Below, piece by piece: positions 1 to 57,200 of a stretch of DNA of 64,000 nt. The notes beneath the pieces are model-generated. The model did no database searches. It was given only the letters and a program-made list of their open reading frames with translations, and had not been told where the DNA came from. This DNA is from Takakia lepidozioides. Its lineage: Eukaryota; Plantae; Bryophyta. The stretch is from positions 20,398,001 to 20,462,000 of the forward strand of contig CM060733.1 of assembly GCA_030704615.1 (NCBI GenBank), given 5' to 3'. The number at the start of each line of letters is the position of its first letter. The stretch's first letter is position 1. The position numbers and the translations under genes were made by a program.

Positions 1-3000
1 CGTAGTGTCTTTCATCTTGTCTGAATCTTGCTTTGGCTTCTTGTTCCACTTCAATCCAGCCCCTCTCGCACAAAGAAAGTGTTTCTCCTTCGGAACGCTC
101 TTCGTCAAGAAATCAGCAATCATTTCAGATGTTGGAAGATACTCCAGTGTCACTTCCTTCGACTGGACCTTTTCTCGTATGTAGTGATACTGGATGTCAA
201 TATGCTTACTACGAGCATGAAACTTAGGATTTGCAGATAGCGCTATTGCACTTTGATTATGTGCATAAATTATAGTAGCCTTCTTCTGAACAAATCCCAA
301 GTCTATCATCAGACTCCTGAGCCACACTGCCTCTGCTGCAGCCTTTGATAAAGCCATGTATTCGAATTCAGTACTTGACAAAGCCACGGACGTCTGCTTT
401 TTGCTTGACCAGCTTACTGCACCACTGCTAGCTTGAAGCAAAAACCCGATGTTGAACGTCGAGTGTCTATGTCTCCAGCCCAATCCGCGTCTGAAAAACC
501 TATTAGGGTTGCTCTTTTGTCCGATTTACAATACTGAATTCCAATGTGAAGAGTGCATTATATGTACCTCATCACCCTCTTTGCTGCTTGCCAATGAGGC
601 TCTACGGGGTTCGATAAAAATTGAGCAAGACTACCCACTGCAAATGAGCAATCAAGTCGGGTGTTGACAACAGCATGCATCAAACAACCGACTGCTTGTG
701 AATAAGGCACTTCTTTGCATCAAAGCTTTTCCATATTCAGTTTCTGGGCAATCTGACTTTGTTAGCTTCTCCCTGGTCTCCATTGGGGTGCTAAGAACTC
801 CAAGCAAATACCTTTCTTGCAACAATCTGATCCATCCTTCTCCCCTGTTTCTTGAAATCTGCATCCCAAGGCAGTAGTGAATCTCCCCCATATCCATCAT
901 TTCAAATTCAGATTCGAGGAGCTTCTTGATCTCTTGCAAGAAATTTACATCATTGCTAGCCCTCAACATATAATGCCAGAATAAGGTAACTCGTGTTCTT
1001 CCGCTGCACGTAGACGTTCGAATCAGCTACGCTTTGATCAAACCCTATTGTCATCAAATAGATGTCAAATCTTTGGTACCATGCCCGTGATGATTGCTTG
1101 AGCCCGTAAAGTGATTTGTTCAGCTTACAAGCTAAACCAGATTTGCTCTCTTGTATGACTCCTTCTGGGAACTCCATATAAATGTCTTCTTCTATGAAGC
1201 CATTCAAGAAGGCAGTCTTAACATCAAGTTGTTGAACTTCCAAATCAAACTGAGCCGCAAGCGCAAATATCACTCGTATAGATGCTAATTTGACTACTGG
1301 TGAAAAGGTCTCTGTATAATCTAGTCTAGATATCTGTGAGTATCCTTTTGCTACCAATCTTGCTTTATAGCGATCCACATCTGCCCGAAGTTTTACTTTG
1401 AACAGCCATTTACAACCTATAGGTTTTCTATTCTCTGGTAGCTTCATGACTATCCATGTTTTGTTTCTTCTTAAAGATTCCAGCTCAGAATCTATAGCAT
1501 TCTTCCATTGTTCCGTTTCGGAACAGGATAAAGCCTCCTTCAAGGTAACAAGTTCGTTTACAGAAGCTTGTGTCAAAAGTGCTCTCCAGGGTTTCCTACC
1601 TTCTATACTCTCAATCAACCTATCAGGTGGTTTCTTGATTCTAGTAGATCGTCTATTTCCTGGTGAGCTTGATGTCTCTCTCCTAGCCTGTCTTGAATCC
1701 CTCCCTGCGGTGGGTGAGGTATTTTCTCTCATTATATCCTCTATGTCATCATAAGGCTGATAAATTGAACCTGTGCTCAATGGTGATGGTAGTGCTCCCA
1801 CTACTTGACTTGGCCTAGGAAACTGAGAGGGTATTTGAGAAGGTTGCACACTTGGACTTGTGTGAGTGTTTTGTGGTACTATGTGAGTGCGAGGAAATGG
1901 TAAATTATTAGTGTTTGCATACTGCTTAAAGAAAGATCGATCTAATAGCATTGAATATTTGTCTGCTTGTGTTCCTTCTTCTATAGCATCTCCCACTGTG
2001 TCATTACTATCCTCATGGAATATCAAATCTCTAGAAATGATAATTGTCTTTTGTTTGGTCATTAATCTGTAACCCTTAGTCTGTTTACTATAGCCCAAAA
2101 ATGTAAAATGGAGGTTTTTGAGTCTGGTTTGCATCTATTATCCTTCTGTACTAGTGCAAAGGCTCTACATCCAAAGACTTTCAAGTGTGATATATCAGGT
2201 TTCACACCTGTCCATAACTCTATGGGTGTTTGTTATTCTGCAGAGCTTTGGTTGGTGACCTATTCTGTAGGTATGTGGCAGTCATAAGAGCTTCACCCCA
2301 ATAGACATTTGGTAAGCTAGCATGGTGTAGCATGGAAAGTATTGCTTCCACTAAGGTCCTATTTTTCCTCTCAGACACCCCATTCTGTTGTGGTGTTCCT
2401 GCTACAGTAAACTGCCTCTTTATGCCACTCTCTTGACAGAATAAATTAAACTCATTAGAAATGTATTCACCACCCCCATCAGCCCTTAGAACCTTGATCT
2501 TCTTACTTAGCTGATTTTCAACCAGTAACTTATACTGTTTAAACCTCTCAAATGCCTCTGACTTTTGTTTTAATAAATAAACAACAATAAACCTTGAAAG
2601 ATCATCTATAAATGTGATGAAATACTTAAACCCGTTGTGTGTGAGAGTTTGCATCGGTCCACAAATGTCAGTATGTACGAGGCCTAACAGTTCAGTAGCT
2701 CTTGTGCCTCCCTCTACAGGGAATTTCTCTCGGTGCTGTTTTCCTGAGATGCAATCTTTACATAATGTTAGTTTCCTAACATCTACTGAATCCAACCCTC
2801 TAACCATTGAGTTAGTTTGCATCTGATGCATTCTACCTTGGTTCATATGACCTAATCTACAGTGCCATAGGTCTGCCTTGTTAGTCTCTAAGACAGTTGG
2901 CATTGCCATGACTTGTGAGTTTTGTAATGCAGTTCCTAGCTTATAGAGTCCGTTCTCTATCTCATATTTTGCTATGAGATTTCCATTGGAATTCTTCAGG

Positions 3001-4650
3001 TTACAACAACTTTATGTTCATCTCTCCCCCAGCTAGGTCTAATTGCTTAACAGAAAATAAATTCTTCTTGAGACCTGCTATTTCATGTGTTGAGTCATCC
3101 CCTAAATAGACAACCTGTCCCTGTCTCCACTCTTTGTATGTCGCAAAAGTGTGTATGTCATACGTCATGTGTTGTGTGGCTCCTGTGTCCACATACCAAG
3201 TTGAATCTTTCCCTTTACTTATGATCATCGCTGCTACATAGAGCTGATTGCCTTCGACTGCAACATGTCTTTGTGTTGCTTGTTTGTTTGCTGCTTCAGC
3301 TGCAATCCTCTTCCTACAGTCCTTAATCATATGTCCAAACTTCTTACAGAAAAAACACTTGATTTGCTTCTTCTTTCCTTTATTTGAGTTTGATCTTTCG
3401 CCATCCTCCTTCTTGACACTACTTTTGTCCTCATTTTGCTTCTTCCTATTAAAACTATTATATGTACTAGACTTCTGTCCAGAATATAATGCAGTTTTTG
3501 AATCTGTAGCAGGTCCAAGACTCATCATTAAAGTTTCCTCCTGTATTAAGTCTGTAATTAAAGACTGTAGACTTATATTCGGCTGTCTCCTAAAAGAGCC
3601 TATAAATGTCCGATAACTCATCGGCATACTCCTTATTAGGGATAAGACAACATCCTCGTCTGACACAGGGGAACCAGCAGCGGAAAGCTGTTCTCACAAA
3701 GGTCTGAAGACATGTATATGCTTGGTGACATTTTCATTCTCTTTCATTTTTAAAGTTTGAATTTTGTCTTTAAGGTACATTTTGGTTACTGCATCCTTTG
3801 ATTCATATAACCTTGTCAACTCTCGGTATGCTTCAAATGTACACGACTGTACATGTGACACTACACTATTGTCCAAGCAGTTATTAATTATGGTGAGTGA
3901 GAGGACATCTCTCTCTTCCCAATTCACTATACTCCCAACACCTGTGGCTGGAAGCGCTTGCTGCCCAACAGCGATCTGTGCTGCCGTGGGAGCCACTGGT
4001 TTTAACTCTGTCCCTACGACTAGAGCCCATAGTTTTTCTGCTTTTAACAGTAGTGTTACTCTATGCTTCCACACATGGAAGTATGTGCCGTCAAACTTAG
4101 GAATATTGCTCACATCTACTCTTTGAGCCATTCCAGTCTCTCAATCAATTATCATTTTCCAAGAAAGCATGAACATCACAGAATTCAGGCCATGTTAGAA
4201 CTTGTGTTCTTCTATACGAAACAAAATTCTTCCACGCCGATACATCGTGGAGAATTGTGAGTTCTCTCCTCCAAACTCTATCGACTCATTTTAATTTCAT
4301 TGTGTGTCTCGAAATTATTAGTTCGTTCTCATTAGTGACACTCTCTCTCCCGAGCCACAACCATGGCTCTGATACCATGTGAAAACATCTATTCTATCCA
4401 GAGTCAATCACACACATAATCGTGTAAAACATAGAACTAGATTAAATAGATCTTACATCAAGAGAGAAAGTGTTCACAAGAGATATCTGCACTCCCTGTG
4501 TCTCGGCTGAGTCTGGTGGTTCTACATCTACTCAACTGTTGAGCTCTGTACCGTTCCACACTCCTTGGTGACTTCAACCACCTAACCACTTCAGATGTAA
4601 GACTTGGATGTAACTGCACATCCTTAATCTATAATCTAGTACATCCTACA
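1..4650 (-). mobile_element. Ty1/copia LTR retrotransposon, frameshifted; 3' LTR lies outside the window
   Basis: Minus-strand order is gag (3694-4131 KFDGTYFHVWK), CCHC knuckle CFFCKKFGHMIKDC and protease WYVDTGATQHM (3001-3666), integrase LWHCRLGH/VHTDICGP/QQNGVSER (2220-2909), RT YKARLVAKG/LDVKTAFLNG/LYGLKQ (956-2134) and RNase H DNQSAI...KHIDIQYHYIRE...ADFLTK (about 90-260). Integrase precedes RT, which is the copia order. The 5' LTR abuts the PBS at 4378; its outer boundary (about 4650) is approximate. Confidence 0.95.
4365..4377 (-). promoter_or_regulatory. Primer-binding site (tRNA-iMet) of the copia element
   Basis: + strand GGCTCTGATACCA reads TGGTATCAGAGCC on minus, directly next to the LTR end (TG on + at 4378). 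Confidence 0.9.
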
Positions 4651-6150
4651 CTATACACTGTTGCGGCACAGCCCCCAAGGATCAGCAGGCGCCACCACAG
4701 TCATGTAGTTATTACTTGAGCAGAGCGTTGGTGAAGGAAAAACGATGTGTAGTCGATTTCAACGTCAATTGTGTTGAAGATTTGCTACTTGTTACATTTC
4801 CAATTCTGTTCGTAGAATCACGTCAAACTTATTTTCTTTCATAATTTTCTAGTCATGGAAATTATTTTTTGGTCTTTTTATAAGCATGCAAATGCTTGAT
4901 GATGTCCTTGTTTTAGCTTAAGATTTTGTTTGATGGGTAACTAAATGTAATAGGGGAGAGAGGGGTAGGTATGGAAAGCTGGTAGGGTAGCTAGTTTTTG
5001 CCTCTACATGACAACATCACATCATGTGTGCTAAAACTGAGGCTGCAGCTACATACTACATACCATTATCTGTTCTCAGTATGACACAACTGTAGAAATT
5101 GACAGATCTTTTTTTAGCTGAACTTAACATGGATTCTGACAAAGACATTGTTGCTAACAATTGTAGGGTTACCACAATGATACATGGATTTAGTCCGTGC
5201 AATCCAGCCTGTCCTTCCTCTCTTTCTGTACAACTACACCACCCACCAGCTTCACGGGATTTTTGAGGTATGCTGGAGTTTAAGCTTCAATCAATATCCC
5301 TTGTAAATCTTTGTTCTGTGTTCTGTGGTTCAGGACAGACTGATTGTTTCCCATCCAGGGTGGGGCGCACTTGTATATTTCCTCATGTTGCTACCTACAT
5401 CACATTTGGGACTCTCAGGTTTGGTGCATCCTATATCTGTCATCCTTGATCTGTCAGGATGGTGAATTGTTACTTTATTTTCTTCCAGTTTAGACCTGAT
5501 CCAAGAAACGCGGTGCTTGGGTGTGATTTTGGCAGCTGCCATGCCACAAATATTGTCCCCAAGCAATCTTGGAAATGATTTACCAATGACCACCGGACAA
5601 CTACCTAAAAACCTGTCAAGTCCTTAACCCTTAAACGCCCAGTAGCCCGTTTTGGGCCTTTGAAATCAGGAAATTTGCAATAACTTCACAGGATCTTAGA
5701 ATTTTTTTGAGTTTTGGATATGTTATGCCCAGCCACCTAGGCTAATCTGAACCGTTGGGCGATTTTCCCTGATCAAGGTTAGGGTTCCGGAATTGTTGTG
5801 AGAGTGGTGGGGGGTCAGCTTCCGCCATTTTGCTTCTCTCTCCCAAACACTGTGCTCTGGGTCCCGCACTTTCTGAGTTCCTTGCGCGAGTTGGAGGGTG
5901 CTTGCAGGTGGCCGTTTGGATTCCTTGCAGGTTGCCGTTGCGTTTCCTTGCTCTTGTCTCCTTCTATAACTGAAGCTCCCGTTGTCGCTGCATCAAGAAG
6001 CTCTTAGCATTCAAGGCGTTGTTGGCTCATTGCGGCTGGTATGACACCTCTCTTCTATTGCCTGTCAACAAGCTTTGTTTCTTCATGTATGTTGTAGATA
6101 CGAGCTTCTTCTTCCATTGAAGGCTTTGCTTCATTCCTGTAGGCTTGCAG

Positions 6151-6624
6151 GCAGAGGAACTTAGGGAGACAAGTTGCCAAGATTCCTTGTTGTCATTGAA
6201 GGAGAAAGAAGGCCCATTACTGGTGACTATATAGGAGAGGAAACATGGGTTCTACAGACATGCCTCTAGCAGCTTCTGCGCATTGCTAGAAGAGTCTCTT
6301 GTTATTGGCAATTGGGCTCGCGCTTTGGGCGCCTCTCCAGAGCAAGTCGCCCAGTTGATTGGGTGTTTGAATGAGGATTATCTTACGTGCTTGAAGAGGC
6401 CCAAGCGGGTGAAGTGGCCTGCATTTCCAAAACCAGCCAATTTTCGGTACCTATTTCGTCGTCAGGCTGCGGAGATTCTCGGGTGGGTTGATCGTAAAGA
6501 GGAAGGTGATCCACATGGCTTTTCTCCTGAGGTAAATGAGTGTTTGAGGCTATCTGTGTGGCCTGATTTTGATGGATCCTCATCTGCCACCAACGATGAG
6601 ACTGAAGGTAGTAGCAAGGTCTAG
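6151..6624 (+). other. Probable second (accessory) coding region inside the piggyBac element, function unknown
   Basis: The frame is open from about 6121 to 6624 except for one TAG at 6232-6234. The C-terminal part is protein-like (PANFRYLFRRQAAEILGWVDRK...EVNECLRLSVWPD). A possible 3' splice acceptor lies near 6142-6150. Confidence 0.45.
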
Positions 6625-6819
6625 AGGTAAGAACAATTTTGGGCATGCGAGACTTGATGACATTGCGAGTTCAATTTCTGGTTTGATTCGGGTCTTGCAT
6701 ATTCTCTGCGTAGTTCTCAAGTTGCTAGAGATGTCGCAGGTCATAGCCAATCTTGGGAAGATCTAGGGGTGCTGGGATCCACTGTAAAGGTTGCAATGAA
6801 CCATTTGTACCTGCCTAAC

Positions 6820-8731
6820 ATGGCTTCTTCTTCCAACGTCTAAGAATTTGGTTATGGTACTGTCGTGGACAAGTCGTGGGACATTGTGAGTGCGTCTGAT
6901 ACATATGTTGTCTCCTTCTTTGCTGGGCTTGGGGTGCATACCGTGCCCTCTCATGTTTGCCTTCCTGTGGACCTTGACGAGCCTATGCCAGTTACAGTAA
7001 GTGCCATGCTTGGTTTGGATGGTGTTGTTGAGAACACGGTAGGGTCTGAATCTCAGACAGAATGTGACTCGGACTCTGACTATGATCCGGTAGAGGAAGA
7101 GAGAGGTAATCCAGATGCTGGTCAGGATCCAGACTTGTGGGATTACTGTGTGGACACTGGAAATGCGGCCCATGAGCTCGGGCTTTATGATTTGGCTGAA
7201 TCTTGGCGTGAATGGCCACCGAAAGATAAATTCGCAGATGACATATGGAATTCACAGTGCACAGAGCTGCCTCAGGTAACGTGGAGTGGGGGGGAGACGG
7301 GTCCTAAGGTGCCTTTGGATAATAGTGCTCTCCCTGTAGATTTTTTCAATTTGTTCTGGCCGGCACCTATGATGCGGAAAATCTGCAGAATGACAAACTT
7401 ATATGCCCAGACCTTATATAGAAGGGGGCAAATGAAGGGGGGAGAGTGGTGGTATCCTGTGAGTGTTGTGGAATTGAAGGCGTGGTTGGGAGTTCATATT
7501 CTCATGGGAATCAAGAGATTGCCCAACACAAGATGTTACTGGAAAGGTAACAATGAGTTCTTCAAGTGTCCTTCCATTATGCGCATCATGAGTCGCAATA
7601 GATGGGAAGCAATTTTGAGGTGTTTGCACCTAGTGGACAACCGGTTAGTGGAGGTGGATAAATCAGCCCCTGCTTATGATAAAATTGCAAAGACCCGTTG
7701 GTTGTTAGACCAGCAAAATGACTTGTATGCTCGCTACTGGCAACCCGATCAGAACCTGTGTGTGGATGAGATGATGGTGAAGTACAAAGATAAGTACTCT
7801 AACCTGCAGCAGTATATGAGCAAAAAACCAGTGAAATGGGGTATAAAGTGGTGGTGCTTGGCTAGTGCCAAAAGCCGATATGTTCACAAGATGGAGGTGT
7901 ACCTTGGCCGTGATGATGCAATTGATTTGACACACGGGCAGGGATATTCTGTTGTAACCAGACTGTTGGCTGGTTTTGAGGGGAAAGGGCACATAGTGAC
8001 CATGGATAATTTCTTTACTAGTCCTATTCTTTTCTATGACTTGGCTGTCCAGAATATCTATGCTACTGGTACTGTGAAGACAACTCGGGTGGGATTCCCT
8101 TCATGTCTTGATTTTGGAAAGAGAGGAGAGAGAGACACTATGCAGTACCGCATGCATAGATCTAACAAATTGGTGGCACTCTCATGGTTTGACAACAAGC
8201 CAGTCACATTGTTGAGCACTGCTTGCAGCCCTGTGGGGGCAGATTGCTTCATTGAGCGGTGGCACAACGGTGCTTGCCGCAAGGTCCCCACTTCCCCCAT
8301 TGTGAAGCACTATCAAGAACACATGAGGGGGGTTGATGTGCATGATCAATTGAGGGGCTACTACAGTGTGCAAACGCGTGATCACAAGTGGTGGCACCGC
8401 TTGTTCTTTCATAGCATTGACACATCGCTGGTGAATTCTTATTTATTGTATTTGGCTTGGATGAAAGAGAAGGACAGGAAGCCGCGGTCTCATATGCTCT
8501 TCAACATTCAAGTGGCCAATGGGTTGATTGCCGGGTGGGTTGCTCCCATGAGAACTGTCTTGGAAGGGGCTTTTGTTCCAAACCCGGGTGCACTTCACTT
8601 CTCCCAAAAAAAGTGCTAGGAGAAGGAAGTGTGTCGAGTGTGGTGCCCAACAAAGGTCTTTTTGTGCCTTGTGTGGAGATGTTAGCATCTGTTTGGGGAC
8701 TTGCTTTGTGAAATGTCACAGCCTGGTTTGA
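6820..8731 (+). pseudogene. piggyBac transposase with two lesions (stop at codon 8; +1 frameshift before the cysteine-rich domain)
   Basis: ORF 6865-8619 has motifs LCVDEMMV, KPVKWGIK, VTMDNFFTS, ATGTV and YQEHMRGVDVHDQ (DDD triad). An in-frame ATG at 6820 (MASSSNV) is followed by TAA at 6841-6843. Removing one A from the A7 run at 8606-8612 restores ...KSARRRKCVECGAQQRSFCALCGDVSICLGTCFVKCHSLV* (stop 8729-8731). Confidence 0.9.
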
Positions 8732-11025
8732 GACAATGTCAGTTGGAATTCATGGCTAGAATTCATGGCAATGTGAGTTCATGGCTGCAAAGAGGTGGTA
8801 GATTGCTTTAGTGGTTAGTCCCCTTGCCAAGTGGGGATGCACACAAGGGGGGGATCCTCCCCGTTGTGTTCATGTGTGAGCTGCCAGTTGGGGCAGCTTA
8901 GTGGGTTCAAACCCTACTCACACATTGTTCCTTGGTGTGAGGAGGGTAGGAGTGGGGTGGTGGGATATCTTGCTTTGCAAATGTCAGCAGCCCATTTTTT
9001 GTCCAAATTGCATTTTGTTTTCTGCAATGGATGTGAGATCCCACCAGGATGAATGGGGAGCAGAATCAGCTCATTTGGAAATCATCCCGTCACCCATTTC
9101 TGCAAATTACTCATTCTAATTTACAATTTTGGTATGTGGGTCCCAAAAAAGGGCCCCAGTCTCAACGGTGGCATTTTCTGGATTTTCATCTGATTTCCCT
9201 CAAAATTGGCATGTACCTGCAGCAAGTAGGTACGCTTATAGTTTGCGATCAAAATTTTCAAATTCCAAATTTTTCAAAAATTACACCTGTTTTTAGCACC
9301 AGGGGTCAGGTTTTTGGAAAAAGTAAAAAATAAATACTGGGCGTTTAAGGGTTAAGCACCTATTGGCAATAAACACCGTGTGATCATTTTTTAGAAAGGT
9401 AGCAATTAGGAGCAATTAGGAACTTAACTCTCCTTGTATTTGATTTGTATTTCTATCATGGAATACCGCTCATGGTATCGTTATTACGCGCAACAGGGAT
9501 GTCAAGTTTATGTTAGCTCACAACGGCATGCATGACATGTGCTTAGAGCCGGATTCCATGGGCACTCCCAAACGTCCCCCCAAGCAAGCGCCCTAGGAGG
9601 GAATCGCCCCTAAAAAATTTGAGGGGGTGGTTCCATGGACAACTTTCCATTCACCCCTCTAGAAATCTTTGGCACCAATTGCTGTGGGGTAAATGACAAT
9701 TAATATCAGTTTTGGATGAAAATGTCAAAAATCATTCCCTCTCCTAAAATCTAACTTACTTTGGATGAAAATCAATAATATTCTGTAAGGCTGCGGGCCC
9801 CGCTCTTGGATGAATCTGGACCTCTATCCTTGGTCCTTCAACTATCCATGTCTATGTACAAATCATGAATACATCCTGAGCCTTGCTACTAGGCAGCTGA
9901 CACCGACGACATGAAGTTCTTCCAGCAAACATCCCAATCCTACTTATTACAATAGTTTTAATTCTGAATTGCATCTACTTCTCTCTGTAGTCCAATAGAC
10001 ACTCACTTTTTTGTCTCCATTGTCCCACCATTGACTGGGGTCGGAAAAGTGTTCATTCCAAAGCTTCTCCTCATCTCTGTTATCTGTTTTTGGATACTAT
10101 TCTGCTGCAACATTGGAAGTAACTTGCCAAAGTCACTCCAAACCACCACAGATCCACCCAACGAGCTAACTTACAAAATTCATATGCATCTCAGGGCTGA
10201 GTCAGATGAGAGGTCAAAACAAGCTGAAATAGGTCGAAGAAAAAGGTGCCCTCACCACATTGTCCTTGACCTTGTATCGTGACCCATTAAGGATTTGACC
10301 GACCATCAACCCAAAATGACCTTTTGTGTGTGCTGCTTGTGTCTGTAATCAGGTAATGTTGGATTGGTCTGTGAGAACCACCACGGTGTAGCTGAGCAGG
10401 CAGAGATTGAAACACGACATGCTAAGACCAAGCTGACTTTCCCAAGAATTTTGTAAACATCAGAAAGAATAGCAAATCATGGTACTAAGAGCCCACATTT
10501 GCAGGATGGACAGACTTCTTCAAATCGTACATTAAGAAAAAACCACACCTTGCGATTGCGGTTGTCCCACCATCGTGCAAATTCCAGCTGTGAGAGCTCC
10601 TGCGGTGTACTCATAATCTGCAAATATCCCCCTCTGAGATCGGTGTGTGAAACCTCTCTGCGCTCAAGCACGCGGGGAAAGACCAAAATACACATTCCAC
10701 ATTGTCCGTTTAGGAAGTTCAAGAAGTTCAAGAACCGGACAATCCGGGCAGGCTCCAAAAAACTTGGCGCGACGAGTTTTTTTGGGGATTTTTTGGGATG
10801 GGCAGTCCGGACAGATATAAAAAATTTACGACAATGATGACATTGCGACAAAACGTGGAACTATGGCACCCTATTCCTGCTCTACGCTAACCGACGTTCA
10901 GTCATCACTAGAATAAATAATGGAATAGCCATAGTAATTTTGATATAATAACACTTATTGCATGATTCACATTTAAACAAAACTTTAAACTAACAAAAGA
11001 TTATAATAAGAACCAGCATTCAATG

Positions 11026-12497: not shown

Positions 12498-12703
12498 CCA
12501 CTGGCGTGTAGTCGGGCTAGGGATTGAACCTAGAACCTCCCCCATTCCGGTGGGGTGCTCTACCACTGAGCTACCCATCCTGTTCTGTTCTCATAGTACC
12601 GTGCAAGGGCTATAATCTTGACACTCCAACACTCCCCCTCAAGGCATAGCCCTTATAGCTAATGCCCACCCATTCTAACCACCGCCCCAACCTTGGCTCT
12701 GAT
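12498..12703 (-). mobile_element. Inverted partial copy of the same TRIM (truncated PBS, internal region, PPT, one LTR)
   Basis: The reverse complement reads ATCAGAGCCAAGG...GAGGGGGAG-TGTTGGAGTGTC...GGTAGCTCAGTGGTAGAGC...GGTTCAATCCCTAGCCCGAC. It is joined head-to-head to the + copy at 12703/12704. Confidence 0.9.
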
Positions 12704-13079
12704 TGTTGGAGTGCCAAGGTTATAGCCCTTGCACGGCGCTTTAAGAGCAGAACGGGATGGGTAGCTTGTGGTAGAGCACCCCACCAGAATGGGGGAGGTC
12801 CTAGGTTCAATCCCTAGCTCGACCACACGGCAGCGGTTTTCCAACATGGTATTAGAGCCAAGGTTGAGGCGGTGGTCAGAATGGGTGGGCATTAGCTATA
12901 AGGGCTATGCCTTGAGGGGGAGTGTTGGAGTGTCAAGGTTATAGCCCTTGCACGACACTTTGAGATTAGAATAGGATGGGTAGCTTAGTGGTAGAGTAGC
13001 TTAGTGGTAGAGCACCCCATCGGAAAGGGGGAGGTCCTGGGTTCAATCCCTAGCCCGACCACATGCCAGTGGTTTTCCA
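12704..13079 (+). mobile_element. TRIM (non-autonomous mini LTR retrotransposon) with tRNA-derived LTRs, Helenus/TRIMp3-like
   Basis: 5' LTR 12704-12846 (TGTTGGA...TCCAACA), PBS TGGTATTAGAGCCA 12847-12860, about 50-bp spacer, PPT GAGGGGGAG 12914-12922, 3' LTR 12923-13079. Each LTR carries an A-box-like TAGCT(C/T)AGTGG (one base deleted in the 5' LTR), a B-box GGTTCAATCC and a TTTT terminator. Confidence 0.9.
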
Positions 13080-45160: not shown

Positions 45161-46762
45161 CTACTCATATAAAGATTCCCCGAACTTCTTCATAGCAGTT
45201 GTAGTCGGAAGTCCTAGCAGTACATTGACACTCTTGCGGTCCTTTCCAGAAGACGTTAAGAGGACCACTTCCTTGTCAGGCAAGCTGGCCGGGCTCATGC
45301 AGATAGGTTGTCCCCACCCAAAATCTGTAGTATGGAAAGGAAGTCTCAACCATGTCGTAAGAAGGAGAGTGGCCACAAGTTGGGGCCGGGCACGGGTCAC
45401 CTCGAAGTAATCGATGGCTGATCTCATGTACTTGTCTGTAATCAAAGCAATGGCCTCCTGAACGAGCTGGACAGCATGGGATAACGGCTTCTCTGTTAGA
45501 TCAGAGGCCGTCGTCATTGCAAAAGTAAGTACAATACCATTTCCCATGTAGTACTTGGGAAGAGGGGGCTCAAACTTCGATCGGCCATCAACTGCGAAGA
45601 GGATTCTTGATTTCTGGGAAGGTTCCATGTCCAATGCTTTGGTCCGTGCCCGCCAAGCTAGAGCTGTCAAGGCCTCAAATGCGGTGACTTTACTCACAAC
45701 CTTCTCGTCCAATATCTTTTTCTTAAGAGCCTCGACCTCGTTGGGCTCCAAGGTAAAGGAGTTATACACCAGATTTTCTCCGAGCAACAGATCTTTGTTC
45801 ACAGAGAGATCCTCGATTTCATCAAACTCATGGTGAGGGAAATCGACTTGGGGCGGCGAGCGGTGTTTCAAAACCATCCGATCGAGGTAAGGGGGGTTTG
45901 AGACATCCAAGCCACGAGCGAGCTCTCCCCATGCCAGAACAAACTGATTAGCGGAGAGCCCATCCATCATGCAATGGTTGTTGTTGATACCCAACACAAA
46001 ACCCCCGCATTTGAACTTTGTCACCTGCACACGAGACGAAACATATTTAATGTACAATGGCTGCCACTGCCTGTTCAGCTCAAATGGCGAAGAAAGGAAG
46101 CAACGGACAAAATGGAGAGAAAGGAAAAGGAAAAGGAAGGAAGATAGCTGAGACGAATATTTTCTTCTGCAACACATTACTACATGTACAATATCGGCTG
46201 CAGACACCGGTTGAGAGAAACCATTGGCATTGAGCTTTGCACCGCATGCTTTGATGAACACAAAACAAACTTTCAGAAACTTAAGGAAACGGATAAAGAA
46301 ATATGCCTCACTCCTTACCTGAACAAGCAATGGAGGAATTTCTAAAATGTTTCTGGCGTTAGGCTGGTCATAGACAAGCTGTTTCATGAAGGGAGCCGGC
46401 CTCGAAAGCTCTCCCAACTCTGCAATGTGATGATCTGCAGATGCCTCCACAAACACAACTCCTTGTCCGTTACAGTCAATCTGCAGTTTGAAATCTGGGC
46501 TTAGGCCCAGTCTTCCAGCCATCGGAGTAAAGTGCACGAGGAGTTTCCGAAGAGACTCTCTAATGACATCCACGGGATCTTCGTTTTTCTTGTCCTCTTG
46601 CGCATTGAAGAAATATACTGTCCGCATTGTAACAGCGATGTTTTGGTCAAGGTTGGAGAGATAGAAGACATTGTTTTCGACGGGCTCCGCAGAGAAGACC
46701 AATGTGGGTTCCTTCACCGTAATATTGAGCTTCAGCGGGGGTGCATCGTCACCACCTGGCAT
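45161..46762 (-). CDS. BAHD acyltransferase, clade V (omega-hydroxyacid/fatty alcohol hydroxycinnamoyl transferase-like), 2 exons, about 435 aa
   Basis: ATG at 46762; exons 46762-46319 and 46024-45161. The intron sits at the conserved LLVQ|VTKFKCGG position. Motifs YLSNLDQN, HCMMDG (HXXXD), YMRSAIDYFE and DFGWG. Confidence 0.93.
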   Translation of the reverse strand: MPGGDDAPPLKLNITVKEPTLVFSAEPVENNVFYLSNLDQNIAVTMRTVYFFNAQEDKKNEDPVDVIRESLRKLLVHFTPMAGRLGLSPDFKLQIDCNGQGVVFVEASADHHIAELGELSRPAPFMKQLVYDQPNARNILEIPPLLVQVRSEAYFFIRFLKFLKVCFVFIKACGAKLNANGFSQPVSAADIVHVVMCCRRKYSSQLSSFLFLFLSLHFVRCFLSSPFELNRQWQPLYIKYVSSRVQVTKFKCGGFVLGINNNHCMMDGLSANQFVLAWGELARGLDVSNPPYLDRMVLKHRSPPQVDFPHHEFDEIEDLSVNKDLLLGENLVYNSFTLEPNEVEALKKKILDEKVVSKVTAFEALTALAWRARTKALDMEPSQKSRILFAVDGRSKFEPPLPKYYMGNGIVLTFAMTTASDLTEKPLSHAVQLVQEAIALITDKYMRSAIDYFEVTRARPQLVATLLLTTWLRLPFHTTDFGWGQPICMSPASLPDKEVVLLTSSGKDRKSVNVLLGLPTTTAMKKFGESLYE

Positions 46763-48230
46763 TGTTGCTGGCCAAGGTCTCTCACAGGCAGCACCTAGGA
46801 AACAAATCCTCACAGCTAGGAAAGAACGAGCACCCACAAACACAATGCACTTCAGATTAAGTAGGCAGCAGTCTAAAGAGTCCCTCACCTCACTGTGGAA
46901 CAACTGTAATAACTCCCACTCAGGCCCAGCTCACAACAACCCAAACAGCATTTCTCACTAAGTTCTACTTAAAGCTAGTATGCTGCAAAAGCAAGATTGA
47001 AACCCACTCCGTAGCGCGCTGAGCAAAGCTTGCAGAAAGCAGTGCTTCAAGGTCAGCCGGAAATCAATGCAATTGTGGCAGACAATAACATGGCATCAAC
47101 TGCATGCTGCAGCAGCCATAAATGCATGCCGGCCTTCTCCCGTGCAATTCTCCCTGTGCCACTCACCCAAGTGCTGCCGTTACTTTACATTCCATACATA
47201 CCCATCACGTTGGCCCTCATCACACTCTGTGCATTCATGGCAACCATCTCGCAAAATGGTTGCGATGCTGGTGGCTGGACTCTAACTTAATTCCGTTCTC
47301 CATGTCCACAATCACAGTCGTGCATCGCGGCCTCAGAGGCACACGCTTTGTGACTAAGTTATGATGCCACAGTACCAAACAAACTATTCTTGTTCTTCTG
47401 GAATACATGGGAAAGAAGAATTGCATTCTTCATGATGTTACAAAACCATGGGAAGCCATCAGCCAGTAGGCTATACTTTAGAAAGAGAAACACAATTCAA
47501 TGAGAATGCAATTGAGGGAAACATGATCTCTTTGATTCATTCTCTTTGATGGGCAACAGTGCAATAGCAGCAGAAACAAGGCTCCAACATCTTATGTATT
47601 TGACTCATCAGCCTACAGTAGAGCTCAACTACTTGGTCAGAATGGTACAAATCAAAGAGAAAAAGCTGACATAGCAACGCCAAGCTATTTATACATTATC
47701 CATGATTGTCACTGAGGCTGATGTGTAAGGGGTCAGTAACTAACAGAAACCTTGACTGGCTTAGATGAAAGGTTACACAGTAAACATCCACATCTTTGTA
47801 AGATGTCCAGCAATTTATCACAAATAGAATCCCTCCATGGTGAAGTTGCTCACCCATTGACCTGGAAGGTGAGGGACTGATATTGTTGTTCAAGCAGGGA
47901 TGACATTTTCCTGTTTCCTTGATTACTCTGTTGCAGCAGTATGTTCTGTGGCTTCCGATTCCTTGTGTTTGGTGTTCAATTGTGGAAGATCAACCGGTGC
48001 AAGGAAATCTTTTGCAGTAGCTAGCCCACGGAATAGTTGTCTCCTTGTTGATGTCAAGGATTGATTTTGGAAATCCAGACAGTCGATGTCAAGTGATACT
48101 TGGAGTACCCTCTCAACACAAACAGCGGTTGTGAGTTTGGACTCTTATGCAAAATCTTGGTTCAATCTTGTTATCAATGAATATTTATGTGTAAAAGCAC
48201 ATCGTGTATCCTCAAAACAATATGCGTGGG

Positions 48231-51200: not shown

Positions 51201-54200
51201 ACAGTATGCTCTCATCAAGTCTGAGAGGTAAGGACACACTCTTGTATGCACTGCTTTCACTCCTGCATTGGACGCCAGAGCTTCCCCTCGGTAAATAGTG
51301 CCGAACTCAAACCACAGAGTGAGCAACCGAGGCATCGCCTGAAAGAGTCGGCGATGGCCTTTATGCAGGCCCTTAGCATAGAAGATGAGAGCATCCGGAA
51401 GGTAGCTCCACCAGGGCTTGTCATCCACAGGAGGGTGCCTCCGATGCCTGCCAGGCTGGAGACAGATGCACAGTATGACCTCACACATGCATTCAAATTT
51501 CAAGTTCTTTCACAGGATAGCACTTCTAATGAGAATAGTCTGGGTCACGAGGCTGGATGCTCACCTGAAGTGAATCCTTGGCTCCATCTAAACTTTCTTC
51601 CTGCCTTCGTCGTGCATCGACAAGTAAGTCATCATAGTACTTGGCGACGAAGAAAAAGCCCTTTTCCCAGTGAGGCTGCAGACTGCGAACCTGGTGGTAT
51701 AAGCTTAGTACATCCTTTTTCTGCTTTTGTCCTGTGTGGTGAACCCAGCGGGCCAGGAGGAGAAGGGTTTTTGCCACGTCATGGTCTTTGTCTCTCCGAA
51801 CCTGTGTGCTGTTGACTACTCGACTTGCACTCGCAGAATTTGTGGATGTTCCTGGTGCTCCTCTGGGAGCTGCTGATTGAGTAACCAAAAGACCACCAAT
51901 TGCTGAAACTGTCGCCTCACCAAGGACCTAATGGAGCAATCAAGCTTTCAGAGGTGGTTAGATACATGGTGGTTGCTTAAGTTGGTATATTTCCCCAATG
52001 AATCTTATGCACACACACTTGACAAGCTGGTAGAATAATGTTAAGCCCAAGCTTGCTGCAGCTGAAAAGATACTAGCATCTATGGGCTTGCCTTCCAAGA
52101 TAATGAACCAGAAATAGTCTTACAACAAACTGAGACCTCTCAAGGGGACACACCTGTTGAGGCACATTGGTGAGAGCTTGCTGAAGCTCCGCTATGGCAC
52201 GGTGACTTCTCTGTGTGTCCCAAAGCAGCTTTGCCATTTCCATGTGAGCATTGGGAGCTCCCACAGATTGTGCCTGCAGGATCGCCCTGTTGGCTGTTTC
52301 ATAGTGCCCTGCTGCTCTACACAGTTTCGCATACTGCAGCCAGCATGCACCCACTTCAGCTTGCAAGTTGCTCGCACTGAAGACCAACCTCCGGAGTGCC
52401 AAAATTGGTTCACGCGTCCACAGTGAGGGCTGCATGTATTCAGGCATTTATTGATTGTCACGATAATGTTGGCCACTTCAGCCTTGAAGGACAAACAAAA
52501 CATTATTGTGAATAATGGTTGCAAGACACTTAGTTGCTGAAAGAAGATAGCACCTGGAAGTAGGAGCCCTTTTTCTTGTGCCCCTTTACAACAGAATCTG
52601 TGGCACAGGAAAGTCTACTCTGTGTAGATTAGTTGGGCCCAAAATACTGAAATGTATAATAGGCTTGAGATCCCCCCCAGCCCACAAACCTGTGTGATTT
52701 TTAAGCGACTCTCCCAGTCTTCAACTAACTGCACCATCCTCACATGGGGTTGGACCCTGTGAGGCTCGCCTGCTTTACCAGACTCTTCACCATCCATAAA
52801 TGCTAGAGTACTGAAGTCTTCCAACTCCCGTAGCATATGCAACTTGACAACAAACGGGTAGGCACGAGTATACGACTCCATGCTTGCTGCCGCCAATGGT
52901 GCAAGGAGAGTCTGCCGAGAATACATAAGCTGTTCAGCAAATAGATCTTGGTCCCTCTTCTGAAGAGCTTGTAGGACCTTGCCCAAGCTAATATCAAATG
53001 CTGAATTTCCATCCGAAGCATTTGATAACAAACCCTCCCCATCAGCCCCCCTCACATACTCTTCCAGCAGATCCCATTGCCCAAGGCGCCATGCTGCTTG
53101 TAGCCCTCTGGTGCTCCACTCTTTTGTGTGGTTGGGCATCCGTGAGATCAACCCGTCAACATGAATCACCATAGCCTGTGTGGTCACATCAACCAACATG
53201 TTTTGGTATTTTAACGTTCACAAATGTTTCTCACCTCAACACTTGTTCGAAATACAGCACCAGGCTTTACTCACATGAACATGCTCACTGAAAGAATCAT
53301 TTGAACAAGAATAATAACACCGAAACTAGAATACACTATCAGGTCTTCAGCCAAAAATCTGCACCAGCTTCTATGCTAACAAGTGTTGGAAAGTCACCAC
53401 CCAGACGTTCCAATCGCATGACATGTAGGATAGCATCAACAAGCTTAACTCAATATTCCAAAGAAGAGCTCCAGGAGTTAAAGCCTGACAGGAAACTACA
53501 ACCACCAGAACTCAGCCAGGCGACCTACATATGGTTCTGTAGACATGTCACCACAGATTTCAGTAGATTTTGTAAATGGTATTGGATAGACCTGCAAATG
53601 ACCCATATTGAGCAGGCAGTCAAGAACCCCTAGATGTCGTGTCACACTGTTGGGTTCCATTTGAAGAGCTTGTTCACAGCATGTGAGTGCTTCTCCCCAG
53701 TTCCCTGCCTTCTCATTGATGAGTATTTGGTCCTGAAGGCTTGCAGGTTTGCAAAGACGCGAGAGCCCTGAAAGCCCGTCAGGCTCCTCCAATCCACTGT
53801 AAATCTCCAGCAGAAAGGTCACATCCTCATCTGTAAAGGCTCCACTCGTCCCAGCAGCAGGATTCAATGCACCCGACTTTTCATGTACATGAGACTCAAA
53901 GTAGAGCAAAGAGCGGGCATAGGCTTGGCACCGGAAGGAGGCCCCTGCCAAGGCTTGCTTTGGAATTGCAGCTAACAGCTGAGAGACATTGTCAATGCGC
54001 CGTGCAACCTGGTTAGCCTCTTCCACTTTAGTACTTCCCCGTGTTCCTCTGCTTGGTATATTAACTGGTATTGCCTGACTGGGGGCCACTGATCCACCCC
54101 GCTTGCAGTCATCCAACCATTTCCCCAGATTGTCTAATAGAGTGAAGACAGTTTGAGTGCTTACTTCACTTGGACCAGACCAGCTACGTGAGGAATTGCA

Positions 54201-57200
54201 GATCTCTTCATCTGCAGCCACTGCAGAAATTCCCCCTTTCAGAAACATTATCCAAAATAAAACTAACGCAAACAATGGACATCTGTAACAAGACGTCTGA
54301 AATCTCATTCAAGGCTAAAACATGAGGTTTGTAGACGTGCAAGCTGGGGAGCCAAAAGCCTGATCACTCCTATTCGTTCTATAATGCTCAAAGCCTGCAG
54401 GGAAGTTCCAGATATTAGTGACATTCTCGCATTGACAATTTGCTGCCATGTAAAAGTATAGTGGCCAATGATATGTCATTTGTTACCAGTTGAAGCTGTT
54501 TCAGACAGCACGTTCAAGATTTCCTCCGTAACACCAGTGCGCGCCTCTTCCGATCCATCACAAACTACGTTGAGAACCAGGTAAGGGAGGAGGTAGAGTG
54601 CAGTGCCCATGTCATGCCTCACCACTCCTCGGCAAGCTGTAAAAATGTCAGCCCTCTGCCCTGTGGCTTGTGACACCAACCGTCGAATCCAAAGATACAT
54701 CCACCGTCTGAAAGACATACCAGGCTGGAGAAGTGGCCCAGTGGGCATCACAGCACCTGATTTTTTAAGAAGATACTTGGAAGTCAAACAAGGAGTAATA
54801 ATTTCTTTCACGTCATCTGAAAACCTTTGCCAGAGACGTTCCCCACTCTCATTTGTTCTCGCAGCAGCACCCAGTATAGTTTTATCGCAATCTCTGCCCT
54901 CAAAAGACCGCAGATTGGAAGCAACCATCTTTCCAGATCTTGAACCTGAGGTCCTCCCAGCCCAAGCCAGTGCACCTCGTCCAAGCTGGGCTGCCCGACA
55001 CCCACTGAATTTCAACAGCTCCTGAATCGCCAAGGCAGCAGTGTCTTGTATATCTGTATCAGAAGCTGCCCTGAGAACCGGGGCTAGGTGCTCATTTATC
55101 AGCTCAAATACAAGATCGTCATCGCTGCGCTCGATTCTTGAACGGCAGCGAAGGTCCACCTGCTGCAGGTTTCTTGTGATTCAATCATGAGAACAAAATA
55201 ATAGCAGGCTATTGCTTAACACAGTGGGTGAATAATTCAACTAGCATGGCTAGTGGGTGGATTCATCTACTGCCTGATCCCTGCAATGCAGACGTGAGAA
55301 TATTGATGGGACGTCCAGTACATTGCTATTGTGGTTTGAAGTGAATTTGTACTTAACCCTCTTATTCTGAAAGCAGAGGCAGAAACAAAGTATGACGCCT
55401 CCCGAAGGGAGCGTAACTTATGGTGTCACTTCACCACACGGGCTACTGCCTTCCAGCTGAAAGGTGGACACCTTCATGACACACCAGACCGTGGTTTGAA
55501 CCCACAACCACATCCAACGTGGTATGTGCCCATTACCACTGGGCTACATGCTGGTTGTCGCAGAGGCAGAACACTATAATAGAACATCCAAATTCGCAAA
55601 TCAATACATGCAAAGGCATATAATTGACATTGATCAACATTATGTCAATAAAAGTTGGGGAGCATGGTACACAAGTGTCGTTTCTAGAAGTAAAGCAAAC
55701 TGACCTGCAACTTCACAGGATCAACTGCCCCAAGCTCTCCCAAGCATTCAGCACATGCAATCTTCAACCTCTGACTCATGGCCGTGCGAGATTCCTCTGC
55801 ACATCCGCGCATAAGGGCGGTGATTAGACAGCTTATGACATCCGCATCCAAGCTCGCCTCTCCAATTAACATTGCCCCTATATCTTTCCTTTTCAAGCGC
55901 AAGACTTTGTTTAATTCACTAGCTGTCATGTATCGCACACTCAAGCTTTCATGCCGTAACCCATCAGTGGCCTGCCGCAGTTGGTCACGCAAACTCAGGA
56001 GTCCATGAGCCTCTTGAAGAATTGCATTTACCCCTTCCAGGGCAGGAAGGCTAGGAAGAAGGGGGAGCTCTACTGCTTGATCTTCCAAGACACTTCTGTT
56101 CTTTACGACTAACTCCTCCAGTATTTCCACAGCTGCGGTCAGGTGTGGGGCTGTCTGCTCCCCTGACTGCCTCTCGAGACATGGCATGAGTGAAACCACA
56201 ATCTGGCTGGCTACATTTTTCAGGTTTGTTGGAGACACCTGGCATAATTAATCAATTATAGGGAAAACAGTTAGAAAACAAAACCTGCTTGCAACCAAAT
56301 AAACAACTAGTAACAAACACATCTGGTGGCAATCTCAACTAGACCAGAACATTGGTGGGAGCCTACTGCAAGCACTCCATGCACATCTTTGTGGTGCATG
56401 GCACTCCAGTTTGCAAACATTGAGGGCTGGTACACATAGAAGCTCGAAAACTGATGACCAAGGAAACCCCACAACAATTCGATAAATAGCATATTTGACT
56501 TAGTATACCTGCGCAAGCGTCCGCACAAATGACAGCCATGCTTTCAACCCTTCCCCTCGCAAGAGAGGCTCTTGCAGTGCCTGGGTAAGCAAGGCCATAA
56601 TCTTCGGAACGAATGCGCTGAGATGTGGACCAATCATGTCCATTAAGCGCTCAATGCATCGTAGCGCCTGTCTCTGAGAAGCAATGTCCACTGCACGTAG
56701 CAGCTTCCGGTCGATGCTGTTGAGAAGGCCTACAAAGTGTGTCCGTAGAAAGGTGGGCAGATCATCGGAGCCAGTGACAATACTTGCGACTTCTTGAATC
56801 ATGGGTGCAACCCTTGCAGACCTGAAGCACAGGTAACCTGAATCAAATATATAAAACCTTTCTCTCTCTCGTTATCAAGTACCATTTCATTTCATTTCTC
56901 TCACACAAAGAGGTGAAAGGCTGCCTATCTACACAAGGCACTCAGTCTTTCAGGTCTACAGCTATTCTGCCGCTCCAATTGTTGCTTTCTTTCTTTGATG
57001 CACTCTTGTCCCATGAGATCTTTTAGTTTCTTCCAGGCAATCTTCTAAAATATCTTTCTCTATAATATTTTCTGTCTCCAAAATAAATGCAAATATACAT
57101 AGAAAGTGTTTCTGAATGCCTTCCCTTAGTCCATAAGCTCTCCAACCGTCTCCTTGGCATTATAAAGTTTCTTTCTTCTCCCCGTTTCCTTCTCCGAGAC

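What the first reader, a model, noticed from the sequence alone, without database searches (positions are those of the whole stretch)
5624..9355. Complete piggyBac transposon integrated in a land-plant chromosome, two edits from an open transposase ORF
Seen: TTAA-CCC...GGG-TTAA ends, perfect 17-bp TIRs and an intact DDD triad. Only two visible lesions exist (TAA at codon 8 and one extra A at 8606-8612); repairing them gives a 636-aa ORF (6820-8731) with a complete C-terminal cysteine-rich domain. The start (aacATGGCT, MASSS) looks plant-like. Established: piggyBac is common in animals, fungi and protists but is generally regarded as rare or absent in land plants, and insect piggyBac is imported into plants for seamless excision. 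Inference: this is a plant-resident piggyBac lineage, either ancestral or horizontally acquired, recently active and potentially resurrectable as a native tool.
Basis: partly seen in the sequence, partly recalled or inferred. Interest (0 to 1): 0.82.

Follow-up and report, generated by a model that had tools for sequence, protein, structure and literature searches.

The report
Decayed two-gene piggyBac in a moss-like plant
This is a real, complete-ended piggyBac jumping gene sitting in a land-plant (probably moss-type) chromosome, but it is a slightly decayed copy of a multi-copy family, has more breaks than the two first seen, and piggyBacs in land plants were already reported in a 2025 survey.

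Summary
The element has TTAA at both ends, perfect 17-bp inverted ends and a 584-codon open stretch that is a piggyBac transposase with the catalytic DDD triad intact. There is a stop at 6841 and an extra A at 8606-8612, in front of a cysteine-rich tail.

The host is a land plant; the best match of a neighbouring gene is a moss.

Contigs of the same organism's DNA runs show this is one copy of a multi-copy family. It differs by about 1.7% from the majority sequence, mostly by C-to-T decay at CG and CHG sites. The majority lacks both lesions. It also carries one extra T after 6282 and one after 6681, and C instead of T at 6622.

So this copy has about five frame-relevant lesions, not two. The transposase probably starts upstream, at ATG 6572 (about 719 aa, like its relatives), not at the 'MASSS' ATG.

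The element also carries a conserved small upstream gene (6245-6630). Two distant relatives have the same gene in the same position. One tRNA-like fold lies behind the transposase.

A 2025 survey already reports piggyBacs in land plants. This scan has about 155 piggyBac notes in this genome, including a copy an earlier follow-up called complete.

The parts
5624..5627 (.). left TTAA target-site duplication
   Evidence: Read directly. Part of inverted pair I1.
5628..5644 (+). left terminal inverted repeat, 17 bp, begins CCC
   Evidence: Perfect reverse complement of 9335-9351. No further subterminal similarity between the two ends.
5645..6244 (+). 5' non-coding part, with a 23-bp unit repeated 2.2 times at 5901-5951
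   Evidence: Contig depth is highest at this end, which fits deletion derivatives that keep the ends.
6245..6630 (+). upstream accessory gene (ORF1), broken here: the ATG at 6245 is out of frame with the body 6283-6621, and TAG at 6622
   Evidence: - The majority of family contigs has an extra T after 6282 and C at 6622 (frames).
- Homologues lie upstream of the transposase in L002 (E 1.5e-9) and L005 (E 4e-19).
- A profile search finds 236 clusters at E <= 1e-3.
- No Pfam, PDB-sequence or fold match.
- The model is helical, pLDDT 86.
6572..6843 (+). probable N-terminal part of the transposase gene, overlapping the end of ORF1; broken by a missing base at 6681/6682 and by TAA at 6841-6843
   Evidence: - Frame 2 is open from 6548 to 6681, with ATG at 6572 and 6596. 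Frame 1 is open from 6682 to 6840.
- The majority has an extra T after 6681 and C at 6841.
- The resulting length, about 719 aa, fits relatives of 711-751 aa.
- Similarity of this piece alone is not significant.
6844..8616 (+). transposase core, open frame, DDE_Tnp_1_7 domain with D at codons 7765-7767, 8005-8007 and 8335-8337
   Evidence: 44-45% identical to L001 and L003 over about 600 residues. The N-terminal piece from 6844 matches the relatives' profile at E 4.6e-4.
8606..8612 (+). run of seven A that shifts the frame in front of the cysteine-rich tail
   Evidence: Family contigs in X1, X3 and X5 have one A fewer. Homology continues in the shifted frame.
8630..8731 (+). C-terminal cysteine-rich domain (C-x2-C-x7-C-x2-C-x5-C-x3-C-x3-C-H) and stop codon, in the shifted frame
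   Evidence: Pfam PF13842 does not match it.
8874..8925 (+). 52-nt tRNA-like fold without an anticodon arm (acceptor stem, D-like hairpin, T arm with a UUCAAAC loop), preceded by a hairpin at 8840-8870
   Evidence: Fold z-scores are -3.2 and -3.1. The Rfam tRNA-Sec match, 15.7 bits and E 3.5, is not significant. Contig depth peaks here. Earlier scan notes describe such units in other copies.
9335..9351 (-). right terminal inverted repeat, ends GGG
9352..9355 (.). right TTAA target-site duplication
   Evidence: A 356-nt contig of runs X1 and X3 spans 9304-9659 with no difference, at flank-level depth.

Best explanation
The stretch 5624-9355 is one mildly decayed copy of a multi-copy, autonomous-type piggyBac DNA transposon family living in the nuclear genome of a land plant, most likely a bryophyte.

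The element has the canonical cut-and-paste anatomy:
- TTAA target duplication.
- CCC...GGG inverted ends.
- A DDD transposase with a cysteine-rich tail.

It also has two non-canonical parts:
- A small conserved helical-protein gene in front of the transposase, overlapping its probable start.
- A tRNA-like fold behind the transposase.

Shown: after insertion this copy accumulated about 1.7% change. Most of it is C-to-T at CG and CHG sites.
Inferred: the copy was methylated and silenced.

The changes include two stop codons (6622, 6841) and three single-base length changes (after 6282, after 6681, in the A run at 8606).
Shown: the frames are broken.
Inferred: the copy cannot make either protein, but it could still be moved in trans because its ends are intact.

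The family majority lacks all five lesions. The family also has internally deleted derivatives. It was therefore active recently and may still have working copies (inferred).
For: **Ends and target duplication:**

**Transposase identity and triad:**

**Tail and frameshift:**

**Plant context:**

**Multi-copy family:**
- Exact flank contigs have depth 34-72. Interior contigs have depth 331-550 and differ from this copy by 57 changes in 3,270 bases.
- A contig bridges the right junction without a difference.
- Joints 5660>9163, 5924>9010 and 6425>7750 indicate deletion derivatives.

**Decay spectrum:** 26 of the 38 listed differences are majority C/G to this copy's T/A. Eight are at CG and nine at CHG, against 10% and 17% of cytosines in those contexts.

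**Relatives:**
- Relatives at 41-45% identity lie on plant-like contigs. One sits next to a CACTA transposase, another next to F-box and FBA_1 genes.
- They form one clade with the window's protein, SH-aLRT 100.

**Accessory gene:** it is conserved in position in L002 and L005.
Against: - The runs laid are assembled contigs, not raw reads, and may be the data the window was assembled from. Depth is only a rough guide to copy number, and the junction support is not independent.
- No listed contig bridges the left junction, and no empty site was seen.
- The upstream start at 6572 rests on open frames, the majority's extra T and the length of relatives. It does not rest on significant similarity.
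- No intact copy was seen directly here.
- The host is coded, so 'moss' rests on one BAHD gene at 69% identity and on earlier unchecked notes.
Confidence: 0.85

Rival explanations
1. One reading: a single-gene piggyBac whose transposase starts at ATG 6820, is 636 aa long, and is exactly two changes away from an open, functional gene.
For: - Both lesions are real and private to this copy.
- Significant homology to relatives begins just after the stop at 6841.
- The upstream piece has no significant similarity on its own.
Against: - Relatives have about 79-115 more residues in front of the homologous point and are 711-751 aa long.
- The family majority carries an extra T after 6681. This joins an open frame starting at ATG 6572 to the transposase frame, giving about 719 aa.
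- The conserved ORF1 is also broken in this copy.
Confidence: 0.2
2. The family reached this plant lineage by recent horizontal transfer, rather than being an old resident of land plants.
For: - The 2025 survey reports widespread cross-group sharing of piggyBac clusters.
- The nearest named relatives are cnidarian PGBD4-like proteins at 33-35% identity.
- No close relative was found in the metagenome contigs.
Against: - The nearest relatives of all, at 41-47% identity, sit on plant-like contigs and form one well-supported clade with long internal branches.
- Scan notes report several divergent piggyBac lineages in the same genome.
- Composition and CpG depletion match the surrounding window.
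Confidence: 0.15
3. The element is a contaminant or an assembly artefact, not part of the plant chromosome.
For: piggyBac is far more common in insects. The left junction was not seen bridged in the listed contigs.
Against: - The right junction is bridged by an exact contig at flank depth.
- The element lies within 64 kb of plant genes and plant retroelements.
- The decay is biased to CG and CHG sites, as expected for plant methylation.
- The family is multi-copy in the same organism's runs and also appears in a separate 'plant metagenome' run.
Confidence: 0.02
4. It is a domesticated, host-serving piggyBac-derived gene (PGBD-like).
For: The catalytic residues are intact.
Against: - Both inverted ends and the TTAA duplication are kept.
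- The family is multi-copy with deletion derivatives.
- The frame is broken in this copy.
Confidence: 0.01

Closest known systems
piggyBac superfamily DNA transposons (type element from Trichoplusia ni; solved transposases 6x67 and piggyBat 9c0f)
   Same: - TTAA target duplication.
- Short inverted ends beginning CCC.
- DDE_Tnp_1_7 core with the DDD triad.
- C-terminal cysteine-rich domain.
- Size of 3-4 kb.
   Different: - The sequence match to the solved transposases is weak (phmmer E 1e-24 and 1.5e-19).
- The best named relatives are about 30-35% identical.
- No subterminal repeats were detected.
- The tail is not recognised by Pfam PF13842.
- It carries a second conserved gene upstream and a tRNA-like fold downstream.
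'Group 4' piggyBacs of fungi, land plants and algae in the 2025 genome survey (PMC13461360)
   Same: piggyBac transposons with ends, found in land-plant assemblies. This shows that plants do host the superfamily.
   Different: The survey's sequences and species lists were not available here, so membership in Group 4 is untested. The text read (the passages found) mentions neither an accessory gene nor bryophytes.
Unnamed relatives on plant-like contigs (P0001/L001, P0185/L003, P0187/L002, P0003, P0004, P0009, P0016)
   Same: - One clade with the window's transposase.
- Same core and cysteine-rich tail.
- L002 has the ORF1 homologue in the same place.
   Different: - Only 41-47% identical.
- No TTAACC/GGTTAA pair with matching inverted ends was found in L001-L003.
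- L001 and L003 show no ORF1 homologue within the DNA held.
Cnidarian PGBD4-like proteins (Acropora, Rhopilema)
   Same: Closest named proteins, 33-35% identity over about 75-80% of the query.
   Different: They fall outside the plant-contig clade, and these clusters carry the Pfam PF13842 tail.

Membership tests
piggyBac superfamily transposon | TTAA target-site duplication flanking the element | tested here: met
   TTAA at 5624-5627 and 9352-9355.
piggyBac superfamily transposon | Short terminal inverted repeats beginning 5'-CCC and ending GGG-3' | tested here: met
   17 of 17 bases match. The window holds 2 matches against 0.04 expected.
piggyBac superfamily transposon | Transposase with the DDE_Tnp_1_7 (RNase H-like) domain | tested here: met
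   PF13843, E 4.2e-81, covering profile positions 2-349 of 349.
piggyBac superfamily transposon | Catalytic DDD triad (D268, D346, D447 of T. ni piggyBac) | tested here: met
   D301, D381 and D491 of the 584-aa ORF stand in the aligned motifs VDE, MDNFFTS and GVDVHDQ against 6x67.
piggyBac superfamily transposon | C-terminal cysteine-rich (zinc-binding) domain | tested here: met
   A pattern of 7 Cys plus 1 His at 8630-8728, homologous to the tails of L001, L002 and L003. It lies in a shifted frame in this copy, and Pfam PF13842 does not match.
piggyBac superfamily transposon | Precise excision and TTAA-specific reinsertion | not testable with these tools
   No empty site or excision product was seen. 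This needs an assay or population data.
Group 4 (fungi, land plants, algae) of the 2025 piggyBac survey | Placement inside that group in a tree with the survey's sequences | not testable with these tools
   No supplementary files are held.
Domesticated PGBD-type host gene | Loss of inverted ends and target duplication, single copy, intact conserved frame | tested here: not met
   The ends and TTAA are present, the family is multi-copy and the frame is broken.
Two-gene piggyBac lineage noted earlier by this scan ('KolX/P2X7-tail-like helper') | Conserved small ORF directly upstream of the transposase, overlapping its start | tested here: met
   ORF1 homologues lie upstream of the transposases in L002 and L005. 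ATG 6572 lies inside the end of ORF1.
Two-gene piggyBac lineage noted earlier by this scan ('KolX/P2X7-tail-like helper') | Helper protein related to the P2X7 receptor tail | tested here: inconclusive
   There is no Pfam or PDB sequence match. The best fold match is Z 5.9 to unrelated helical chains, and P2X7 is not listed. The model covers only the 113-aa piece of this broken copy.

The most novel reading that the evidence does not exclude
The family is still mobile in this plant. Its conserved helper gene and tRNA-like 3' module are working parts of a plant-adapted piggyBac system that no paper found here describes. A naturally intact copy would then give a native plant piggyBac for seamless insertion and excision.
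Probability: 0.3. Interest if true: 0.6.

Novelty: new variant of a known kind. Interest (0 to 1): 0.33.

Why it matters
piggyBac is a main tool for scar-free gene insertion and removal, and plants currently use the insect element. A young, multi-copy plant family whose majority sequence is open would be a source of naturally plant-adapted transposases.

The conserved upstream gene and the tRNA-like fold hint at requirements or regulation that the insect system lacks.

This particular copy adds little. It is a decayed member, land-plant piggyBacs are already in the literature, and the scan has better copies of the same kind in this genome.

Tried and rejected
- **Second copy or empty-site paralogue in the window:** none. 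The flanks and the element match only themselves.
- **Protein-based scan of metagenome contigs for close relatives:** nothing.
- **Exact 21-base end pattern in metagenome contigs:** one hit, L006, in a marine contig. It shares only 23 bases and nothing else, so I treated it as chance.
- **TTAACC/GGTTAA inverted ends around the relatives in L001-L003:** none convincing.
- **Pfam at E up to 10, PDB sequence search and three fold libraries for ORF1:** no meaningful match.
- **Pfam PF13842 for the cysteine-rich tail:** no match.
- **Significance of the N-terminal extension piece 6682-6840 against relatives:** not significant on its own.
- **Rfam on the 3' part:** only a weak tRNA-Sec-like row.
- **Yuan and Wessler 2011:** could not be read.
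- **The careful tree:** did not finish, so the quick tree is reported.
- **Mended or consensus sequence:** none was built. Broken frames were read in pieces or with X at the breaks.
Full report
**1. What is in the sequence**

The stretch begins and ends with TTAA (5624-5627 and 9352-9355). Immediately inside lie perfect 17-bp inverted repeats, 5628-5644 and 9335-9351. The left one starts CCC and the right one ends GGG. The 17-mer occurs only at these two places in the 64-kb window, against 0.04 matches expected from shuffles. No further subterminal similarity between the two ends was found.

The long open stretch 6865-8619 (584 codons) matches Pfam DDE_Tnp_1_7 over the whole profile, with E = 4e-81. 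It also aligns to the solved piggyBat and T. ni piggyBac transposases. In that alignment the catalytic aspartates D268, D346 and D447 correspond to D301, D381 and D491 of the ORF, at codons 7765, 8005 and 8335.

Behind the A run, in the shifted frame, lies a tail with seven Cys and one His. It matches the tails of three relatives directly behind their cores (E 3e-10 to 2e-4). Pfam's PF13842 model does not recognise this tail.

**2. Where it sits**

The window also holds:
- a Ty1/copia retroelement at 956-4131 on the minus strand;
- RVT_1 reverse-transcriptase fragments;
- an ATR kinase exon;
- a BAHD acyltransferase ORF.

All of the listed hits of the BAHD ORF that carry an organism name are land plants. 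The most identical is the moss Ceratodon purpureus, at 69%. The element's G+C content and CpG depletion (observed/expected 0.42) resemble the window as a whole (0.45).

The runs that hold this DNA carry a coded species label ('organism A'). One separate run is labelled 'plant metagenome'. I therefore accept 'land plant'. 'Moss-type' is likely but rests on one gene and on earlier unchecked scan notes.

**3. One copy of a family, and how it differs from the majority**

I laid the contigs of four runs on 4900-10100. They are assembled contigs, not raw reads, and two of the runs may be the data the window was assembled from. They show presence, not absence.

Depth and divergence:
- Exact contigs on the flanks have depth 34-72.
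- Contigs inside the element have depth 331-550.
- The interior contigs differ from this copy by 57 changes in 3,270 bases, about 1.7%.

The interior contigs thus represent the collapsed majority of several copies.

Junctions and derivatives:
- A 356-nt contig spans 9304-9659 without a difference, at flank-level depth. It bridges the right junction.
- No listed contig bridges the left junction.
- Joints 5660>9163, 5924>9010 and 6425>7750 indicate internally deleted relatives that keep the ends.

At five positions the majority differs from this copy in ways that matter for the reading frames:
- an extra T after 6282;
- C instead of T at 6622;
- an extra T after 6681;
- C instead of T at 6841;
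- one A fewer in the run at 8606.

They are private to this copy. No other length differences appear in the contigs that cover most of 5760-8862.

**4. Gene models**

*Transposase start.* Homology to the nearest relatives begins directly after the stop at 6841. The piece from 6844 matches the relatives' N-terminal profile at E 4.6e-4. Those relatives carry about 79-115 more residues in front of that point and are 711-751 aa long.

In this copy frame 1 is open from 6682 to 6840. Frame 2 is open from 6548 to 6681, with ATG at 6572 and 6596. The majority's extra T after 6681 joins these two frames.

The upstream piece alone shows only a collinear, non-significant motif. I put about two to one on an upstream start rather than the 'MASSS' ATG at 6820.

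*Accessory gene.* A second gene lies upstream. With the majority's T after 6282, the ATG at 6245 reads into the open stretch 6283-6621.

- Its product has homologues directly upstream of piggyBac transposases on two unrelated contigs: L002 (transposase 41% identical to the window's) and L005 (34% identical).
- A profile of five members finds 236 clusters at E <= 1e-3 among 1.84 billion representatives.
- None of 44 members has a meaningful Pfam match, and no PDB sequence matches.
- A confident all-helical model (pLDDT 86) finds no convincing fold relative. The best is Z 5.9.

Earlier scan notes suggested a link to the P2X7 receptor tail. I could not reproduce it.

The function of this gene is unknown. 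My best guess, at low confidence, is a transposition helper or regulator, because its position in front of the transposase is conserved across distant elements.

*tRNA-like fold.* Behind the transposase, 8874-8925 folds as a 52-nt tRNA-like unit without an anticodon arm, preceded by a hairpin (z about -3). The Rfam match is not significant. Earlier notes of this scan describe such units in other copies. I did not test covariation here.

**5. History of this copy**

Of the 38 differences listed individually, 26 are majority C/G to T/A in this copy. Eight lie at CG and nine at CHG sites, although only 10% and 17% of the element's cytosines are in those contexts. Over all differences in run X1 the same two classes make up 66 of 118.

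This is the expected mark of deamination of methylated cytosine in a plant genome. Both stop codons (6622, 6841) arose this way. The inference is that the copy inserted, was methylated and silenced, and has since decayed by about 1.7%. Its ends remain perfect, so it could still be moved by a transposase supplied in trans.

**6. Relatives and origin**

The best protein match is only 45% identical.
- The seven closest clusters are unnamed. Two lie on plant-like contigs, one next to a CACTA transposase and one next to F-box and FBA_1 genes.
- In a quick maximum-likelihood tree these clusters form one clade with the window's protein, SH-aLRT 100. Internal branches are long (the careful search did not finish).
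- The nearest named proteins are cnidarian PGBD4-like, at 33-35% identity, and they fall outside this clade.

This fits a plant-associated lineage of some age better than a recent transfer. The hosts of the relatives are not identified, so I leave 0.15 for recent horizontal arrival.

**7. Novelty**

- A 2015 tabulation lists piggyBac in all groups studied.
- A fern repeat table lists it.
- A review lists piggyBac MITEs in angiosperms.
- One liverwort assembly reports none.
- I found no paper describing a bryophyte piggyBac family, a small accessory gene in piggyBac, or a tRNA-like module.

Within this scan, about 155 notes mention piggyBac in the same genome. They include a copy that an earlier follow-up called complete and two-gene (s1-460191), as well as reports on the accessory gene and the tRNA-like units.

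The claim that piggyBac lives in a land plant is thus known. This copy is not close to function. The two-gene and tRNA-like architecture is the unusual part, and the scan has already reported it elsewhere.

**8. Verdict**

This is a real, well-bounded piggyBac. It is a decayed member of a young multi-copy family in a bryophyte-like plant, and interest is modest.

No mended or consensus sequence was built. Broken frames were read in pieces or with X at the breaks.

Noticed in passing
window 9770-10100 and beyond: Contig depth rises from tens to about 17,000 and then 220,000-460,000 in the organism's DNA runs. A very high-copy dispersed repeat therefore starts about 400 bp to the right of the element. 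No tandem structure was seen.
   Followed up: partly
window 12508-13062: Three tRNA-like genes within 560 bp, two of them with odd anticodon loops (ARAGORN and Rfam). This overlaps another first-stage note about a small LTR element built around tRNA-like units.
   Followed up: no
window 956-4131 (-): A Ty1/copia retroelement with gag, integrase and RVT_2 pieces in separate frames, so it is itself decayed. It lies about 1.5 kb to the left of the piggyBac.
   Followed up: no
window 45161-46903 (-): A 579-codon BAHD acyltransferase ORF with two Transferase stretches. Most hits cover only half of it, and a few long hits look like fusions, so it may be a partial tandem duplication.
   Followed up: no
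window 53496-54308 (-): An exon encoding the M-HEAT region of the ATR checkpoint kinase. This is a host gene in the same window.
   Followed up: no
window 5265-5627, run X7: A contig of a run guessed to be RNA skips 5266-5533 with GT..AG ends, and its match stops exactly at the TTAA/element boundary (5627). It is about 91% similar. It may be a spliced transcript of a paralogous, uninterrupted locus.
   Followed up: no
L002 8972-12652: On a 284-kb plant-like contig, the ORF1 homologue, a 186-aa ORF and an 883-aa transposase follow each other with overlapping ends. This is the same overlapping layout as inferred for the window's family.
   Followed up: partly
window 8728-8901: Contig depth over the tRNA-like region (about 960-1,740) is two to three times that of the transposase body. 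More elements may therefore carry this module than carry the gene.
   Followed up: no
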